Below are positions 48,059 to 64,000 of a stretch of 64,000 nt of DNA, in pieces. The first letter of the stretch is position 1, and each line of letters opens with the position of its first letter. Made by a program: the position numbers and the translations under genes. The notes beneath the pieces are model-generated. The model was not told where the DNA came from. It saw only the letters and a program-made list of their open reading frames with translations, and did not search any database. The stretch lies in contig MCFH01000066.1 of NCBI GenBank assembly GCA_002104945.1, positions 205,529 through 269,528 on the forward strand, given 5' to 3'. This stretch comes from Piromyces finnis finn. Taxonomy: Eukaryota; Fungi; Neocallimastigomycota.

Positions 48059-50504
48059 ATGAATATATTTATTTTTCTGATTGATTTCATTATTATAATA
48101 AAATGTATTTTGGCACAGAATGATAATAATGAAGAATGTATTGTTGTCAATGAATTATTAAAAGATTGTTCACTGAATGATTGTTGTCAGGACAAAAGAA
48201 TAATTTGCTCTAATAACCATATTATTAATATGTAATTAATATGTAATGATTTATAAATAGAATTCTTATCATCAAGTTATAATTTTATTAGAAAAAAAAA
48301 AAAAAAAAAAAAAGAATATTGGAATCTTTCAAATATTAAAATTATTTTAGTATAACTATAGCATTTTTTGTCATAATATAATATAAAAATTGTAAAAGTA
48401 TTATTTATACATAAAAACTTTCTATTATAATACTTGTTGGCATTATATTAATATAATAATTATATATATTGCTTTCATTTACTATAATTTTAAAAATAAA
48501 ATATTAGTTTTTTTTATATTCTAAAAAACCAGAAAACTATTATTAAATTCTCCTCTTAACCATATTTTTTCATTATTAATATCATATTTAAAAAGATATT
48601 CGACTGATTATTACTTGATACCACCAGAAATTGAAAAAATAGCTCATCTAAAATCATTGTAATTATAATAAATATTTTACTGAATTATAATAAATAAATA
48701 ATCATATAATATTGATAGTCATTTTAATATGAATTGAAATAGATCCCTGTATAAGAATTACTCACCTATTTCCATACCACCTGAACTTGGAAATTTAACT
48801 AATCTTGAATATATGTAATTATAATATTATAATTACATATATTTTTATTGTATATGTGTTAAAATATAATAAATAGCTAAAAATATTATTTTATAATTTA
48901 TAAATTTATATATATTTAACTGTTTTAAAACAGATGTCTTTATGGAAAATATTTAACTGGCTCTCTACCACCTGAACTTGGAAATTTATCTAATTTGGAA
49001 GATTTGTAAATATTTATTTAATTATATATTATAAAATATATATTATTTTTATTTTATTAACAAAGTAATTTATTTTAATTTATAAAAAAAGGATTATATC
49101 TGGAGGTCAATTGACAGATTCAATTCCTTCTTCATTTGGTTATTTGTCAAAATTAAAAAAATTGTAGGTTAACTTAAATAATGTATCAAATAATAATGAA
49201 ATAAATAAGATTATTAATTTATTATTATTATTATTATTATTATTATTATCATAAAAGAATTTTATCTAGTAATTATTTAAGTGGTAATATTCCATCAGAA
49301 CTTGGAAATTTATTAAATCTAGAAAGCTTGTAATTAAAATTTTATATATAGAATAGCATATTTATTTTATATATTACTGAATATTCATATTTTTATTTTA
49401 ATATGAAATAGAAATTTAGCCGATAATAATCTATCTGGTCCTATACCACTTGAACTTGGAAATTTAAAGCAATTAAAAATTTTGTAAATGAACATTTTAT
49501 TTTATATTATTAATATTTATTATTATATTTTTTATTAATAATTTTAATTTTAATTTGAAATAGAGATTTATCCTATAATAATATAAGTGGTATTATATTG
49601 CCGGAACTTGAGAATTTATCAAAATTAAAAGCTTTGTAACTTTTATTATATTAATATATTTATTATAGCATTATTAATTTCTAACCATTAATTAATTAAT
49701 TAATTAATTAATTATTATTATTATTGTTATTATTATTACATTTGAAATTTGACAGAGATTTATCTAAAAACAATTTAATAGGTTCTATTCCTCCTGAACT
49801 TGGGAATTTATCAAATTTAGAAAAATTGTAATTAAATTTATTAACATAAATATAAAAAGATAAATAAAATAAAACTGCAATAATAATTAAAAAATAATAT
49901 TTTATTTTTTAAACTAAAATGAAATCAGAGATTTATCCAATAATAATTTAACTGGTCCTATTCCACCTGAACTTGGAAAACTAACAAAATTAAAAACCTT
50001 GTAATATATCTTTATTAATTTATCAATAAAAAATACTTTGTCATTAGTATATCTATGATTAATTATTTTTTTTCCTATTTAAACAGAATATTATCAAATA
50101 ATAATTTAAGTGGTTCAATTCCAAAAGAAGTCAAGAAATTAAATATAAAACTGTAATACATTTATTTTCTTTATATAAATTTATTAGAGATATACTTTAT
50201 ATATATAATTTAATAAATACTCATACTCATATTTTTAAATATATTATTAAGGCATACCTCTAATAATCCTTTATTAAAAACAAAAAGTGGTATTAACAAG
50301 ACAGTTTTAATAATCATTTTAATCACGATCGGAATTTCAATTATTATTTCAGTTTTAGTACTTACATATATAAGGGCTAAGAATAGGATCAAAAATGGAA
50401 ATCGAAGAGGAAATAATATGTTAAGTTATTCAACAACAACTTCAACTTCAGTTTCACAACAAAACACCACTCTATGTAGTAAATCAACGAATGATGGCAA
50501 TTGA
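48059..50504 (+). CDS. LRR receptor-like protein 1 (signal peptide, Cys cap, 10 LRR exons, TM, short Ser/Thr-rich tail); 12 exons, ~376 aa
   Basis: Exons 48059-48231, 48596-48658, 48743-48814, 48934-49005, 49092-49163, 49258-49329, 49412-49483, 49564-49635, 49756-49827, 49929-50000, 50087-50152, 50252-50504. All introns are GT-AG phase 2 and the frame is open. Repeat consensus xLSxNNLxGxIPPELGNLxxLxxL. TM segment VLIIILITIGISIIISVLVLTYI. No kinase domain. Confidence 0.88.
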
Positions 50505-50974
50505 AATTATTCTATTTTTTTTTTTTTTTATTTTACTTTTAATAATAATTATAATACAAAATATTTTCTTTTTCTTTTTTTTTTTTTTTTTTTTGTAATA
50601 AATATATAATATATCAATATCAGTATCAACAACAAAATTTTCAAACTCTGTTTTTGTATTGATTATTTTTATTTAAATCTTACTAAAATGTGTTGTATCG
50701 ACATAAGATTACAATATAGCATTTAAACCAATATCATTCTTGAAAATATATAAAAAATATTTATATATATTTTTATTTTTATATTTATTTTTCCACTTTT
50801 ATATAAATTTTAAATAATAAAATAAAAATAAAATATTGAATGTATAATATAACAAAAAATAAAAAAATATATATATAAAATTTATTTTAAATATTAAAAA
50901 AAAATATATATATTATTAATCCATTTTACCTTTTTTCAAAGGGTAAATTTTAAAAGTTAAAATAGTTTGAGTTT

Positions 50975-51150
50975 ATGAACATTTTTATTTTACTAAACAT
51001 TATTATTATTATTATAATAGTAAAATGTAATTTTGCGCAAAGTAATGCTAATAAAGAATGTATCACAATAAATAAATTATTAATGAAAGATCAATTATTG
51101 TATTGAGGATGGTGTTGAGTGTTCAAATGAAGGTCCTATTACTTTACTTT
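50975..51150 (+). pseudogene. Orphan degenerate first exon of the LRR-RLP family
   Basis: MNIFILLNIIIIIIIVKCNFAQSNANKECITINKLLMKDQ, then a deletion/frameshift, then CIEDGVECSNEGPI. No donor site and no LRR exons follow. Confidence 0.7.
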
Positions 51151-61160: not shown

Positions 61161-61983
61161 ATCATTTATTTTATTTCATTTTTTATTAAATATTTTAAAT
61201 TGAAATTTTAATAATAGCTTCCCATAGTCTAGTATTTTATATTGAAGTTAAAAAAATTTGTTATTATTTTATATTTTATTATTTTTAATAGTATATTTAT
61301 AAATATTTAAAATAAAAAAGAAAATATAAAAGATATTTTGGTTTCTACATAGATTGTCATTATACGTTTTTGACGAATCCATAAATTAGTATAATTCATA
61401 TTATTATAATTAAATTTAATAAACACAATTATATAGAACGAATAATACTATCGGTTTTATATATATTTATTTATTTATTTATAAAAATTTGCATATATCA
61501 TAAATACATACAAGTTTTTATTATATATTCAACCTAAATATATTTTATAATAATTATTCCTTAAGGAAATACTTTTTCATAAAATTTAAAGTTAAACACC
61601 ATAACTACTCCAAAAAGTATAATTTTTTTTTCTTTCCTTTTCATTAGCCCTTTTTTTATACTTTAAAAAAGAGATGTTGAAAGTCAACAAATATATTCAT
61701 TATTAATTTTATTACATGATAAATTTGTTGGTTTTGAATAATAATTATTATATAATATTATATAGTATAGATAAAACTATCCATAAACTATTTTTTTTAA
61801 AAAAAAAAAAAAAGTATAAATCTATTTTTATATACCTTTTTTTTCCTTTTTTTCCTTTTACTAAAAATAATTTTAATTTGAAAATAAAACTTTAATTTTT
61901 TTTTTGCTTATTAATAAATAAAAGTTTTTTTTTTTTTTTTTTTTACTTACAAGGAATAGTCGACTATTAAATGACTTAAAAAA

Positions 61984-64000
61984 ATGAAAACATTTATTTT
62001 ATTAATTACTATTATTATTATAATAAAATATGCTTTGGCACAAAATAATAATGATTATGATGCTGAATGTGTTATAGTAAATAAAATATTACAAAACGGA
62101 GAATTAAATAATTGTTGTCAAAATAAAGGTGTAGATTGTTCAGATGATGGTCATATCATTAATATGTAATAATTCAATTATCATTATATTAATAAAATAT
62201 AAGATATATATTTTAAACTAAACTTTTATTCTATGAAGAATAATATTTAGTTAATTTATTATTAAAATTATAAAAAAGGAGTAATGAAAATAAATAAAAT
62301 TGAGTCAAACGTACCTAATTATTATTCACTTAAAATTATTAAAATATTTTTAAAGTAATAATGTTTAATATAATTAATCCTTTTTTTTTTATACTGAAAA
62401 AAATAAAACCTTTTAAATATTAACTATACATAGTATTTACCATAGTATTTACTATTATAATAACAATTATTATTATTATTATTATTATTATTGCTTTGTA
62501 CTAAAATAAAATAAAAAAAAAAGAGACTTTAAAATATATTTTCAATTTTTTAATACTTGTTAAATATATACAAACCATTTTATTTAAAGTAATGTAATAT
62601 TATATATATTTTTTATTAATATTTGTTAATCTTTATTTCTATTAATAAAGATCAAATATTGATAGTCGTCCTGGATCAATACCACCGGAAATTGAGAATT
62701 TAACCCATCTAAAACAAATGTAATAATAGAAACTGTTCTGTTTATTATTATAATTATTTTATAAATATTTTATAAAAATTATTTAATATTTGAAATAGAT
62801 ACTCTTATGGAAAGGGTTTAACTGGTACTCTACCACCTGAACTTGGGAATTTGACAAGTCTTGAATATTTGTAATTTTAATGTTATAAACATAATAACAA
62901 TGATTCATAATTTATAATTTGTTATTATTTAAATAGACTATTCACATTATATTACTTTTAAAATAGGTGTTTTGAAGAAAAAAATTTAAGCGGTTCTCTA
63001 CCACCTGAACTTGGAAATTTATCTAATTTGAAAGATTTGTAAATATTTAATCCATTATCGTATATATTAAATATGGGATTCATTATTTTGCTTTTATTAA
63101 AAAACATTTCTATATGAAAAAAAAAAAAAAAAAGAACAATATGTAATGGTCAATTAACAGGTTCAATACCTTCCTCATTTGGAAACCTGACACAATTACG
63201 AAGATTGTAATATACTAAAAGATAATTTTCAATTATTTAAAAATAATCGCACAAAACATTAATTTTTATGAATTTATTATATTTTTTTTAAAAAAAAAGA
63301 TATATATCGTATAGTAATTTGAATGGTAACCTTCCATCTGAAATTGGAAATTTATTAAACTTAAAAGAACTGTAATCTAAATTTTTATTATTGAATAATA
63401 ATTTCATCTATGCTTATTTATTAAAATAAAATATATTACATATTTAGTATTATTTTATTAATTATTACCATTTTTAATATTATGATTTGTATAGTAATTT
63501 ATCTCATAATAATTTAGTCAATTCTATACCACCTGAACTTGGAAGTTTAACTAATCTCGAATATTTGTAATTTTTATATATTTATATATCTCTTGTAATT
63601 ATTTTTGTTAACTCTTTATTTTAACATGAAATAGACGTTTATCTAATAATAACTTAACAGGTTCTATTCCTCCTGAGCTTGGAAATTTATTGAATTTAAA
63701 TTTCTTGTAATTAATAAATAAAATAATAATAATAATAATAATATAATTATATAAATTAATAATTGAAAAATGATATTTTTTTTAAAACTAAATTGAAATC
63801 AGAGATTTATCCAATAATAATTTAACTGGTCCTATACCACCTGAACTTGGAAAATTATCAAAATTAAAAACCTTGTAATAAACCTCAAAAATAGTTTATA
63901 AATGGAAATATTGTATTTTTAACTAACTATTTTATTGTTCATTTAAATAGAATATTATCAAATAATAACTTAAGCGGTTCAATTCCAAAAGAAAAAATTA
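61984..64000 (+). CDS. LRR receptor-like protein 4 (runs off the window end)
   Basis: Exons 61984-62165, 62651-62719, 62799-62870, 62967-63038, 63135-63206, 63300-63371, 63495-63566, 63635-63706, 63803-63874, 63951->64000. All introns are GT-AG phase 2 and the frame is open. Same signal peptide, Cys cap and LRR layout as genes 1-3. Confidence 0.87.

What the first reader, a model, noticed from the sequence alone, without database searches (positions are those of the whole stretch)
48059..64000. Tandem array of plant-like LRR receptor-like genes built from one-LRR-per-exon, frame-symmetric cassettes
Seen: four paralogs plus orphan first exons. Each has a signal peptide/Cys-cap exon, then a run of 63-75 nt (mostly 72 nt) exons each encoding exactly one xLxxNxLxGxIPxELGxLxxLxxL repeat. 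A 66-nt capping exon and a TM plus short tail exon follow, with no kinase domain (fully seen in genes 1-3; gene 4 is cut off). Every intron is phase 2, so any LRR exon can be skipped, duplicated or swapped without breaking frame. LRR exon number differs (10, 7, 10, at least 9). The exon-start residues (the xLxxN, predicted concave face) vary strongly while the IPPELGNL half is conserved. Established: the 24-aa GxIP repeat is the plant-specific LRR class used by plant RLP/RLK immune receptors, and one-repeat-per-exon shuffling is described for Ectocarpus ROCO genes. Inference: this could be a diversifying surface-receptor or non-self-recognition repertoire in an anaerobic gut fungus, and it is almost invisible to ORF-based annotation.
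Basis: partly seen in the sequence, partly recalled or inferred. Interest (0 to 1): 0.82.

Follow-up and report, generated by a model that had tools for sequence, protein, structure and literature searches.

The report
Plant-type LRR surface-protein gene array
Four neighbouring genes of the gut fungus Piromyces finnis encode membrane-anchored proteins whose outer part looks like a plant receptor, with one repeat per tiny exon cut exactly where plant genes are cut. The genes are real and unstudied, but nothing here shows that the exons are mixed to make variants.

Summary
Window 48059-64000 (+) is the end of Piromyces finnis contig MCFH01000066.1. It holds four paralogous genes and two dead first exons. 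Each gene has a signal-peptide plus Cys-cap exon, then 6-9 one-repeat exons of 63-75 nt and a 66-nt last-repeat exon. All introns are phase 2. A final exon carries the transmembrane helix and a short tail with no kinase.

- Only gene 1 is fully intact. Gene 2 has a frameshifted tail, gene 3 has one LRR exon destroyed by a 107-nt insert, and gene 4 is cut by the contig end.
- Repeat order is collinear, so genes differ by whole-cassette presence or absence.
- Genes 1 and 3 share 97-100% identical exon-plus-intron tracts, which indicates gene conversion.
- Replacements between paralogs concentrate on predicted concave-face positions, but selection above neutrality is not shown.
- Two plant LRR genes mapped here have the same intron register and phase. 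The Ectocarpus register differs.

Untested or unsupported:
- No evidence supports exon skipping or shuffling.

The scan found this family before on other DNA of the same genome. No paper in the searched library describes it.

The parts
48059..50504 (+). Gene 1, intact, 376 aa. It has a signal peptide plus 4-5-Cys cap exon (48059-48231) and nine one-repeat exons (63 nt, then 8 x 72 nt). A 66-nt last-repeat exon (50087-50152) and a TM plus tail exon (50252-50504) follow.
   Evidence: The public model of the same contig spans the same range and has 376 aa. Hydrophobic segments lie at residues 1-21 and 305-335.
50975..51140 (+). Orphan first exon 1. It is a signal-peptide/Cys-cap remnant split over two frames, and no LRR exons follow it.
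   Evidence: tblastn with the first exons of genes 3 and 4 gives 65% identity over 40 aa, then a frame change. The sequence was read.
51774..51937 (+). Orphan first exon 2. It is degenerate and has lost cap cysteines.
   Evidence: tblastn gives 47% identity over 40 aa at 51820-51933. blastn finds 71-74% identity to the 5' ends of genes 2 and 3.
53108..55220 (+). Gene 2. It has the cap exon, six one-repeat exons (units A, B, C, E, H, I), a 66-nt exon and a TM exon. After the TM helix the spliced frame leaves the conserved family tail, which continues in another frame to 55220. This means a 1-nt frameshift in an A-run near 55095 or an assembly error. An (ATT)64 microsatellite at 54142-54333 fills the intron where unit D is missing.
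   Evidence: The public annotation has only a 60-aa stub of exon 1.
58626..61160 (+). Gene 3, 360 aa if the dead exon is skipped. It has the cap exon, eight intact one-repeat exons, a 66-nt exon, and a TM exon with the conserved tail (SSQQYKTN...).
   Evidence: The public model has 335 aa. That length fits a model lacking one more 72-nt exon and adding a small 3' intron.
59527..59705 (+). Dead LRR exon (unit C) of gene 3. The two halves of a 72-nt exon are separated by a 107-nt insert that brings an in-frame stop. The outer splice sites are still intact.
   Evidence: The sequence was read. The unit assignment rests on comparison with unit C of genes 1 and 4.
61984..64000 (+). Gene 4, cut by the contig end. 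It has the cap exon (61984-62165), eight one-repeat exons (62651-63874) and the start of the 66-nt exon (63950-64000).
   Evidence: The public model (228 aa) ends by read-through into the intron at 63710.
49400..50286 (+). Gene-conversion tracts shared with gene 3. 49400-49626 matches 60085-60310, and 49760-50286 matches 60400-60927. Both tracts are 95-100% identical across exons and introns. The second ends abruptly inside the last exon, and the TM and tail beyond it are unrelated (47-60%).
   Evidence: Intron alignment z-scores of 21-32 against shuffles come.

Best explanation
This is a germline tandem array of a lineage-expanded Piromyces finnis gene family. It encodes type-I membrane proteins with these parts:
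- a signal peptide;
- a four-cysteine N-terminal cap;
- 7-10 plant-type 24-residue leucine-rich repeats forming a curved solenoid outside the cell;
- one transmembrane helix;
- a 40-55-residue cytoplasmic tail with no enzyme domain.

Each repeat sits on its own phase-2/phase-2 exon. The exons are cut at the same place in the repeat as in plant LRR genes.

The array evolves by ordinary birth-and-death processes: tandem duplication, loss or gain of whole exon-plus-intron cassettes (harmless to the frame because the exons are symmetric), gene conversion between copies, and decay.

The most likely role is a surface ligand-binding protein of the receptor-like-protein type. The concave face would bind an external partner, and the conserved tail or a partner protein would pass the signal on. 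This role is inferred, not shown. The diversity is between gene copies in the genome. Nothing indicates that diversity is made by splicing or somatic shuffling.
For: Shown:
- Exon structure, phases and frames, far above chance.
- Identity of the locus: the last 18.5 kb of the window are the end of contig MCFH01000066.1 of GCA_002104945.1. Proteins of that assembly are named Piromyces finnis.
- The public model of gene 1 equals mine in range and length.
- Signal and TM segments, 7-11 N-glycosylation sequons and no kinase.
- The complete paralog P0027 on another contig has the same architecture and exon plan. Its best solved relatives by sequence are plant LRR receptor ectodomains, for example GSO1 at 3e-142 and FLS2 at 6e-112.
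- An AlphaFold model of P0027 shows a 24-residue strand/helix period and a C-terminal helix. Its 39 best Foldseek matches are all plant LRR ectodomains, including RGFR1, FLS2, SERK, BIR3, PGIP and TMM.
- The ten nearest ESM Atlas clusters are all mainly Streptophyta.
- Collinear units with whole-cassette differences.
- Conversion tracts.
- Damaged copies.
- Replacement excess at xxLxLxx positions: pN/pS 1.2-4.2 against 0.3-0.8 elsewhere.
- The same intron register and phase in two unrelated plant LRR genes from Handroanthus and Sesamum.
- The same exon plan in other loci and in a second assembly.

Lead only:
- In Pecoramyces sp. F1, a gene annotated as LRR receptor-like is among the ten most down-regulated in methanogen co-culture (PMC6414434).
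- Earlier scan notes report spliced, expressed members elsewhere in this genome.
Against:
- No ligand, partner or phenotype is known.
- Only one of the four copies is demonstrably intact, so this particular array may contribute little.
- The N-terminal cap does not reach any Pfam LRRNT model.
- There is no C-terminal cysteine cap.
- The structural evidence comes from a paralog on another contig, not from a protein of this window. Spliced window proteins could not be passed to the tools without typing them.
Confidence: 0.65

Rival explanations
1. The symmetric one-repeat exons are used as interchangeable cassettes, by exon skipping or alternative splicing, or by frequent exon shuffling. This would generate a diversifying non-self-recognition repertoire, as proposed for Ectocarpus ROCO genes.
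For: - All introns are phase 2 and all LRR exons are multiples of 3 nt, so any exon can be dropped without a frame change.
- Paralogs differ by whole cassettes.
- Gene 3 can only make a full protein by skipping its dead exon.
- One exon of gene 4 (63495-63566) resembles unit B of gene 1 (81%) more than any collinear unit.
- Replacements are in excess at concave-face positions.
Against: - Order is collinear in 61 of 82 comparisons, and most exceptions are near ties.
- No non-coding or reversed LRR exons lie in the intergenic DNA or on the opposite strand of the array, unlike Ectocarpus (against PMC3341825).
- The exchanged tracts make copies alike.
- pN/pS above 1 is not significant.
- The same symmetric layout is standard in plant LRR genes that are not splice-diversified.
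- No isoform data exist here.
Confidence: 0.12
2. The proteins are adhesins or matrix-binding proteins rather than signalling receptors. The LRR face would hold the fungus to plant fibre, to partner microbes such as methanogens, or to its own wall. The tail would serve only anchoring or trafficking.
For: - There is no kinase or other signalling domain, and the tail is short.
- Solved relatives include binding-only LRR proteins: PGIP, a plant ice-binding protein and Leptospira LRR proteins.
- A related multi-module form (P0004) has three LRR modules with Cys-rich spacers and no cytoplasmic domain of note.
- Bacterial look-alikes are surface proteins with fn3, Big_2 or sorting domains.
Against: - The tail motif (S..SSQQYKTN...SDI.IK) is conserved between gene 3, the shifted frame of gene 2 and P0027 on another contig. 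This suggests the tail does more than anchor.
- The best matches are plant receptor and co-receptor ectodomains.
Confidence: 0.3
3. This particular array is largely a decaying remnant. Most copies are pseudogenes left by birth-and-death turnover and have no present function.
For: - Two dead first exons.
- A dead LRR exon in gene 3.
- A frameshifted tail in gene 2.
- A fresh SINE-like insertion inside the array.
- No Pfam hits on record for the public products.
- No RNA holder on record for the stretch.
Against: - Gene 1 is intact and modelled identically in the public annotation.
- Non-concave codons show pN/pS of 0.3-0.45 in four pairs (0.83 in genes 1-3), which indicates purifying selection since duplication.
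- All splice sites of the intact exons are canonical.
- Gene 2's frameshift lies in a homopolymer and may be an assembly error.
Confidence: 0.15
4. This rival concerns origin. The identity of intron register and phase with plant LRR genes would be convergent, or the repeats would come from bacteria with introns gained later. It would then not reflect shared ancestry or transfer from plants.
For: - The highest-scoring database relatives by summed score are bacterial metagenome LRR proteins with near-consensus repeats of the same class.
- Anaerobic fungi are known for massive bacterial gene acquisition (PMC11291939; PMC6712302).
- Once one intron exists, tandem cassette duplication fixes one register for a whole gene.
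- The fungal cap has four cysteines and misses Pfam LRRNT_2.
Against: - A random register match has a prior of about 1 in 72 (24 codons x 3 phases).
- Ectocarpus shows that another register is possible.
- The cap-to-first-repeat boundary also coincides.
- The CC....GV.C...G.VT cap aligns with the plant C.W.GV.C cap.
Confidence: 0.25

Closest known systems
Plant LRR receptor-like proteins and small LRR co-receptor ectodomains (TMM, BIR, SERK, PGIP class; plant-specific LRR type)
   Same: - A 24-residue LxxLxLxxNxLxGxIPxxLGxL repeat.
- A signal peptide, a Cys cap with a GV.C...V motif, one TM helix and a short tail without a kinase.
- The fold of a paralog matches these structures first.
- One repeat per 72-nt exon, with a phase-2 intron in the Leu codon before xLxxN. 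This layout is identical in two plant genes mapped here.
   Different: - The organism is a fungus.
- The cap has four cysteines and fails Pfam LRRNT_2.
- There is no C-terminal cysteine cap.
- The tail motif is unrelated.
- No known partner kinase.
- The coding sequence is extremely AT-rich.
Ectocarpus LRR-ROCO genes (Zambounis et al. 2012, PMC3341825; PMC11378527)
   Same: - One LRR per 72-nt symmetric exon and a GxIP-type repeat.
- Tandem paralogs with pseudogenes.
- Variation concentrated on the concave face.
   Different: - The exon register differs. The Ectocarpus exon starts at GxxP, whereas here it starts at xLxxN.
- There are no ROC-COR GTPase domains.
- The proteins here are extracellular and membrane-anchored, not cytoplasmic.
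- No intronic or reversed LRR relics and no evident shuffling of order.
Bacterial surface LRR proteins with the same repeat class (metagenome proteins P0013, P0018, P0132, P0135, P0140)
   Same: - A near-identical repeat consensus (LSGSIPPELGNLSNLEYL).
- A cap ending in G.VT.L.L.
- A likely surface location.
   Different: - No introns.
- No Cys cap.
- Different anchors (lipoprotein signals, fn3, Big_2, sorting tails).
- High GC.
Multi-module LRR proteins of anaerobic fungi (P0004, and the minus-strand gene at 3793-5627 of this window)
   Same: - The same Cys cap motif and the same repeat class.
- The same 72-nt phase-2 exons in the window copy.
   Different: - Several cap-LRR-Cys-rich modules in one chain.
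- A hydrophobic C-terminus without the conserved tail.
Leishmania PSA-2/GP46 surface LRR proteins (comparison from my own knowledge, not tested)
   Same: Tandemly arrayed surface proteins with plant-like 24-25-residue LRRs whose number varies between copies.
   Different: - Intronless.
- GPI-anchored.
- Trypanosomatid.
- No sequence comparison was made here.

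Membership tests
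Plant-type (PS class) LRR receptor-like protein | 24-residue repeat with consensus LxxLxLxxNxLxGxIPxxLGxLxx | tested here: met
   Column counts over 26 exons of 23 full codons: L2, N5, L7, G9, I11, P12, E14, L15, G16, L18 and L21 dominate. Pfam LRR_1, LRR_8, LRR_4 and LRR_14 hit family members P0004 and P0007.
Plant-type (PS class) LRR receptor-like protein | N-terminal cysteine cap of the LRRNT_2 kind (C.W.GV.C ... V..L.L) | tested here: inconclusive
   No Pfam hit for the first exons. However, the CC....GV.C..DGH.T motif is conserved in 13 first exons. It also aligns with the GSO1 cap in phmmer.
Plant-type (PS class) LRR receptor-like protein | Signal peptide, single TM helix and short cytoplasmic tail without a kinase | tested here: met
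   Hydrophobic segments at residues 1-21 and near the C-terminus. Tails are 40-55 residues. No kinase family hits the last exons.
Plant-type (PS class) LRR receptor-like protein | C-terminal cysteine-pair cap between the last repeat and the membrane | tested here: not met
   No cysteines lie between the last repeat and the TM helix in genes 1-3 or in P0027.
Plant-type (PS class) LRR receptor-like protein | Ectodomain fold like solved plant LRR ectodomains | tested here: met
   Tested for paralog P0027 only. The model has LRR region pLDDT of 70-90 and a 24-residue period. Its top 39 Foldseek matches are plant LRR ectodomains.
Plant-type (PS class) LRR receptor-like protein | Gene structure of the intron-rich plant LRR genes: one repeat per 72-nt exon, with a phase-2 intron before xLxxN | tested here: met
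   Window genes and P0027 compared with Handroanthus P0080 and Sesamum P0046. Register, phase and cap-exon boundary are identical.
Plant-type (PS class) LRR receptor-like protein | Signals through a partner kinase or adaptor | not testable with these tools
   No interaction or expression data were available.
Ectocarpus-type exon-shuffled LRR (ROCO) receptors | Each LRR on one 72-nt symmetric exon | tested here: met
   The Ectocarpus description is in PMC3341825.
Ectocarpus-type exon-shuffled LRR (ROCO) receptors | Exon register GxxPxxLxxxxxLxxLxLxxNxLx | tested here: not met
   Here the exon starts at xLxxNxLxGxIP.
Ectocarpus-type exon-shuffled LRR (ROCO) receptors | ROC-COR GTPase domains | tested here: not met
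   The proteins have 297-376 aa and consist only of cap, LRRs, TM helix and tail.
Ectocarpus-type exon-shuffled LRR (ROCO) receptors | Signs of shuffling: non-coding or reversed LRR exons in introns, and scrambled exon order | tested here: not met
   No LRR relics lie outside the gene models in 48-64 kb on either strand. Order is collinear.
Ectocarpus-type exon-shuffled LRR (ROCO) receptors | Positive selection on concave-face residues | tested here: inconclusive
   pN/pS at concave positions is 1.2-4.2 with binomial p of 0.08-0.56. The contrast with other sites gives Fisher p = 0.0004-0.03 in three of five pairs and 0.09-0.13 in two. The data are four paralogs with small counts, and the AT bias distorts synonymous rates.

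The most novel reading that the evidence does not exclude
The family descends from an intron-bearing plant LRR receptor gene taken up by the ancestor of the anaerobic gut fungi, which live inside plant digesta. Alternatively, it is a relic of a very old eukaryotic LRR receptor gene structure that other fungi lost. In either case it has since expanded into a germline repertoire of surface receptors. Their concave faces would be under diversifying selection for sensing plant, bacterial or methanogen partners. That would give fungi a plant-like LRR surface-receptor system, which a 2010 survey found almost absent from the kingdom (PMC2939053).
Probability: 0.2. Interest if true: 0.8.

Novelty: new member of a known kind. 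Interest (0 to 1): 0.5.

Why it matters
[quoted passage not shown] Later work mentions only a few LRR kinases in chytrids and zygomycetes (PMC13618815).

This array is one locus of an expanded, kinase-less LRR membrane-protein family in an anaerobic gut fungus. The public records name its members only 'L domain-like protein'. Searches of the paper library for LRRs in anaerobic fungi found no description of the family.

Its exons are cut at exactly the plant position and phase. That makes the origin question testable: descent, transfer from plants, or convergence.

If the proteins sense plant material or partner microbes, they would be candidates for how these fungi find substrate and live with methanogens. 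The more exciting idea, a splice- or shuffle-generated repertoire, has no support so far.

Tried and rejected
- **RNA reads.** Only local scripts read the whole window file. Junction use in RNA is therefore untested.
- **Spliced copies in metagenomes.** The search for related loci with a first-exon alignment found no relatives. An earlier attempt with a wider alignment was rejected as too variable. A degenerate DNA pattern spanning the last intron junction found nothing.
- **Protein searches.**
  - The exhaustive search with exon 1 of gene 3 returned mostly 58-83-aa first-exon stubs and two unrelated repetitive proteins.
  - The word-index search with P0027 was swamped by longer bacterial and plant LRR proteins and did not list the window's own products.
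  - The same search restricted to residues 1-75 found only the query.
Paralog P0027 was used as a stand-in.
- **RNA genes.** Rfam and tRNA scans of the window found nothing.
- **Rejected idea: the concave-face pN/pS values prove positive selection.** The counts are small and the pairs are not independent. Introns in the 5' half are at shuffle level while NG86 dS is only 0.2-0.4, so the neutral yardstick is unreliable in this 17% GC DNA.
- **Rejected idea: the repeat class is plant-exclusive**.

Full report
**Where the window comes from**

The window has 15-20% GC outside its coding islands. The single-exon gene at 55523-56467 (-) is found letter for letter on NCBI contig MCFH01000066.1 of assembly GCA_002104945.1. 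The locus fetched around it is the exact reverse complement of the last 18,478 bases of the window. Window position 64000 is therefore the end of that contig. Proteins of the same assembly are named Piromyces finnis, which belongs to the Neocallimastigomycota.

**The observation**

Chaining them from the four ATG-bearing first exons gives open frames.
- Every internal exon starts with the last base of a codon, and its length is a multiple of three. All introns are therefore phase 2.
- All donors begin GTA, and all acceptors are AG.
- A stricter motif count gives 28 exons here. It gives none on the opposite strand and none in 100 dinucleotide shuffles.

The four products all have the same parts: a hydrophobic signal, a cap with four to five cysteines, a run of 24-residue repeats, a 22-residue last repeat, a short stalk and one transmembrane segment. 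Genes 1-3 also show a 40-55-residue tail. The ectodomains carry 7-11 N-glycosylation sequons. No kinase or other enzyme family hits the last exons.

**Corrections to the observation**

- Gene 3's third repeat (59527-59705) is dead. A 107-nt insert separates its two halves, brings a stop and has no splice sites of its own. Gene 3 can encode a full protein only if that exon is skipped.
- In gene 2, the spliced frame leaves the family's conserved tail just after the membrane helix. The conserved tail continues in another frame. This is a one-base frameshift in an A-run or an assembly error.
- Gene 4 is cut by the contig end.
- The two orphan first exons are real and degenerate. No orphan LRR exons lie anywhere else in 48-64 kb.
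- The public annotation models gene 1 exactly (376 aa). It gives gene 3 335 aa, reduces gene 2 to a 60-aa stub, and ends gene 4 by read-through into an intron.

**What the proteins resemble**

Spliced window proteins could not be handed to the database tools, so I used P0027. This is a complete 287-aa paralog from another P. finnis contig. It has the same cap, repeats, stalk and tail motif, and the same phase-2 exon plan.
- Its best solved relatives by sequence are plant LRR receptor ectodomains such as GSO1, FLS2, MIK2, RGFR1 and PEPR1. Leptospira LRR proteins and PGIP rank further down.
- A single-sequence AlphaFold model has pLDDT of 70-90 over the repeats, a strand/helix period of 24 residues and a long C-terminal helix.
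- Its 39 best Foldseek matches are all plant LRR ectodomains.
- The ten nearest ESM Atlas clusters are mainly Streptophyta.

The repeat class is not exclusive to plants, however. The large protein searches are full of bacterial metagenome proteins with near-consensus repeats of the same kind.

**Gene structure compared with plants and brown algae**

I mapped two unrelated plant LRR genes onto their genomic DNA. One is a Handroanthus LRR kinase fragment and the other a small Sesamum LRR protein.
- In both plant genes, the cap exon ends in phase 2 a few residues after the last cap cysteine.
- In both, the repeats sit on 72-75-nt phase-2 exons that begin at xLxxNxLxGxIP, exactly as in the fungal genes.
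- In Ectocarpus ROCO genes, the 72-nt exon has a different register, starting at GxxP (PMC3341825).

The register is therefore not forced by the fold. A chance match has a prior of about 1 in 72. This fits shared ancestry or transfer from plants better than chance. I could not test chytrid or oomycete genes, which is the test that would separate the two.

**How the array evolves**

Repeats can be labelled A-J by position.
- Gene 1 has all ten units. Gene 3 has all ten, with C dead.
- Gene 2 lacks D, F and G.
- Gene 4 has one unit in place of F and G.
- The collinear unit is the best nucleotide match in 61 of 82 comparisons, and most exceptions are near ties.
- One exon of gene 4 (63495-63566) looks more like unit B. 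It is the only, weak, hint of a moved cassette.

Genes 1 and 3 share two tracts, 49400-49626 and 49760-50286, that are 95-100% identical through exons and introns. The second stops abruptly inside the last exon, beyond which the membrane helix and tail are unrelated. Introns H-I, I-J and J-T are alignable among all four genes (z = 5-32). Most introns of the 5' half are at shuffle level. Genes 2 and 3 share their first intron. The genes are thus mosaics made by gene conversion or unequal exchange, which homogenises the membrane-proximal repeats.

**Selection**

For collinear 72-nt exons outside the conversion tracts, I split codons into the five xxLxLxx positions and the rest.
- pN/pS is 1.2-4.2 at the concave positions and 0.3-0.8 elsewhere.
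- The N:S contrast between the two classes gives Fisher p = 0.0004-0.03 in three of five pairs, and p = 0.09 and 0.13 in the other two.
- pN above pS within the concave class is not significant (p = 0.08-0.56).

The pairs are not independent, the counts are small and the AT bias distorts synonymous rates. The safe reading has two parts. The scaffold is under purifying selection, so the genes have been functional. The putative binding face is free or driven to change. This is expected of any LRR binding protein and does not by itself show an immune-like repertoire.

**Expression**

This could not be tested for this locus.
- The run search gave two small runs with 14-17% of the words.
I kept those letters out of all later searches.
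- Two metagenome scans for spliced copies were empty.

Indirect hints exist.
- An intronless, AT-rich 2.4-kb JGI contig encodes a 744-aa three-module relative with the same cap. It looks like an mRNA.
- A Pecoramyces study lists an 'LRR receptor-like' gene among the ten genes most down-regulated in methanogen co-culture (PMC6414434).
- Earlier notes of this scan report spliced, expressed members at other loci of this genome. I did not check those notes.

**Literature**

Full-text searches for LRRs in anaerobic fungi or Neocallimastigomycota found no description of this family. The horizontal-transfer surveys of these fungi do not mention LRRs. One of them does report a plant-like lyase (PMC11291939; PMC6712302). 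A 2010 survey reported LRR receptors almost absent from fungi (PMC2939053).

**Verdict**

The receptor-like architecture and the plant-like gene structure are real. The array is an ordinary birth-and-death tandem family with gene conversion and several damaged copies. The proposed cassette skipping or shuffling is possible in principle, but nothing found here supports it. The function remains inferred: a surface binding protein, most likely of the receptor-like-protein type. The same family was already found by this scan on other pieces of this genome.

Noticed in passing
window 52425-53018 (flanks 52412-52424 and 53019-53031): A 535-nt body with 42% GC is followed by a 59-nt poly(A). It is flanked by a perfect 13-nt direct repeat (TTCTTATTTTATT). 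This is a fresh SINE-like retroposon inserted between the orphan first exons and gene 2. A 53-nt part of it matches sequences at 1147-1199 (-) and 22499-22551 (+) at about 80%. It has no Rfam or tRNA hit.
   Followed up: partly
window 3793-5627, minus strand: Another LRR gene of a multi-module type. It has two Cys caps (5565-5627 and 4450-4566) and 66-72-nt phase-2 one-repeat exons (5405-5476, 5226-5297, 5073-5144, 4899-4964, 4206-4277, 4037-4105). It resembles the 744-aa three-module protein P0004.
   Followed up: partly
window 54142-54333: An (ATT)64 microsatellite fills most of the intron between units C and E of gene 2, at the place where unit D is missing.
   Followed up: no
L003 (JGI sample 3300010980, contig Ga0138321_10015368, 2365 nt): An intronless, 27% GC contig with short untranslated ends encodes a 744-aa protein made of three cap-LRR-Cys-rich modules. 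It looks like a fungal mRNA from a metatranscriptome.
   Followed up: partly
window 24101-28135, minus strand: A single 1344-aa open frame for formylglycinamide ribonucleotide amidotransferase (purL type) at about 42% GC. It stands out from the 16-20% GC surroundings.
   Followed up: no
They lie in intergenic DNA between the coiled-coil gene and gene 3, and were kept out of all later searches.
   Followed up: no
window 55523-56467, minus strand: A 314-aa single-exon gene with no Pfam family sits inside the LRR array between genes 2 and 3. It is in the public annotation.
   Followed up: no
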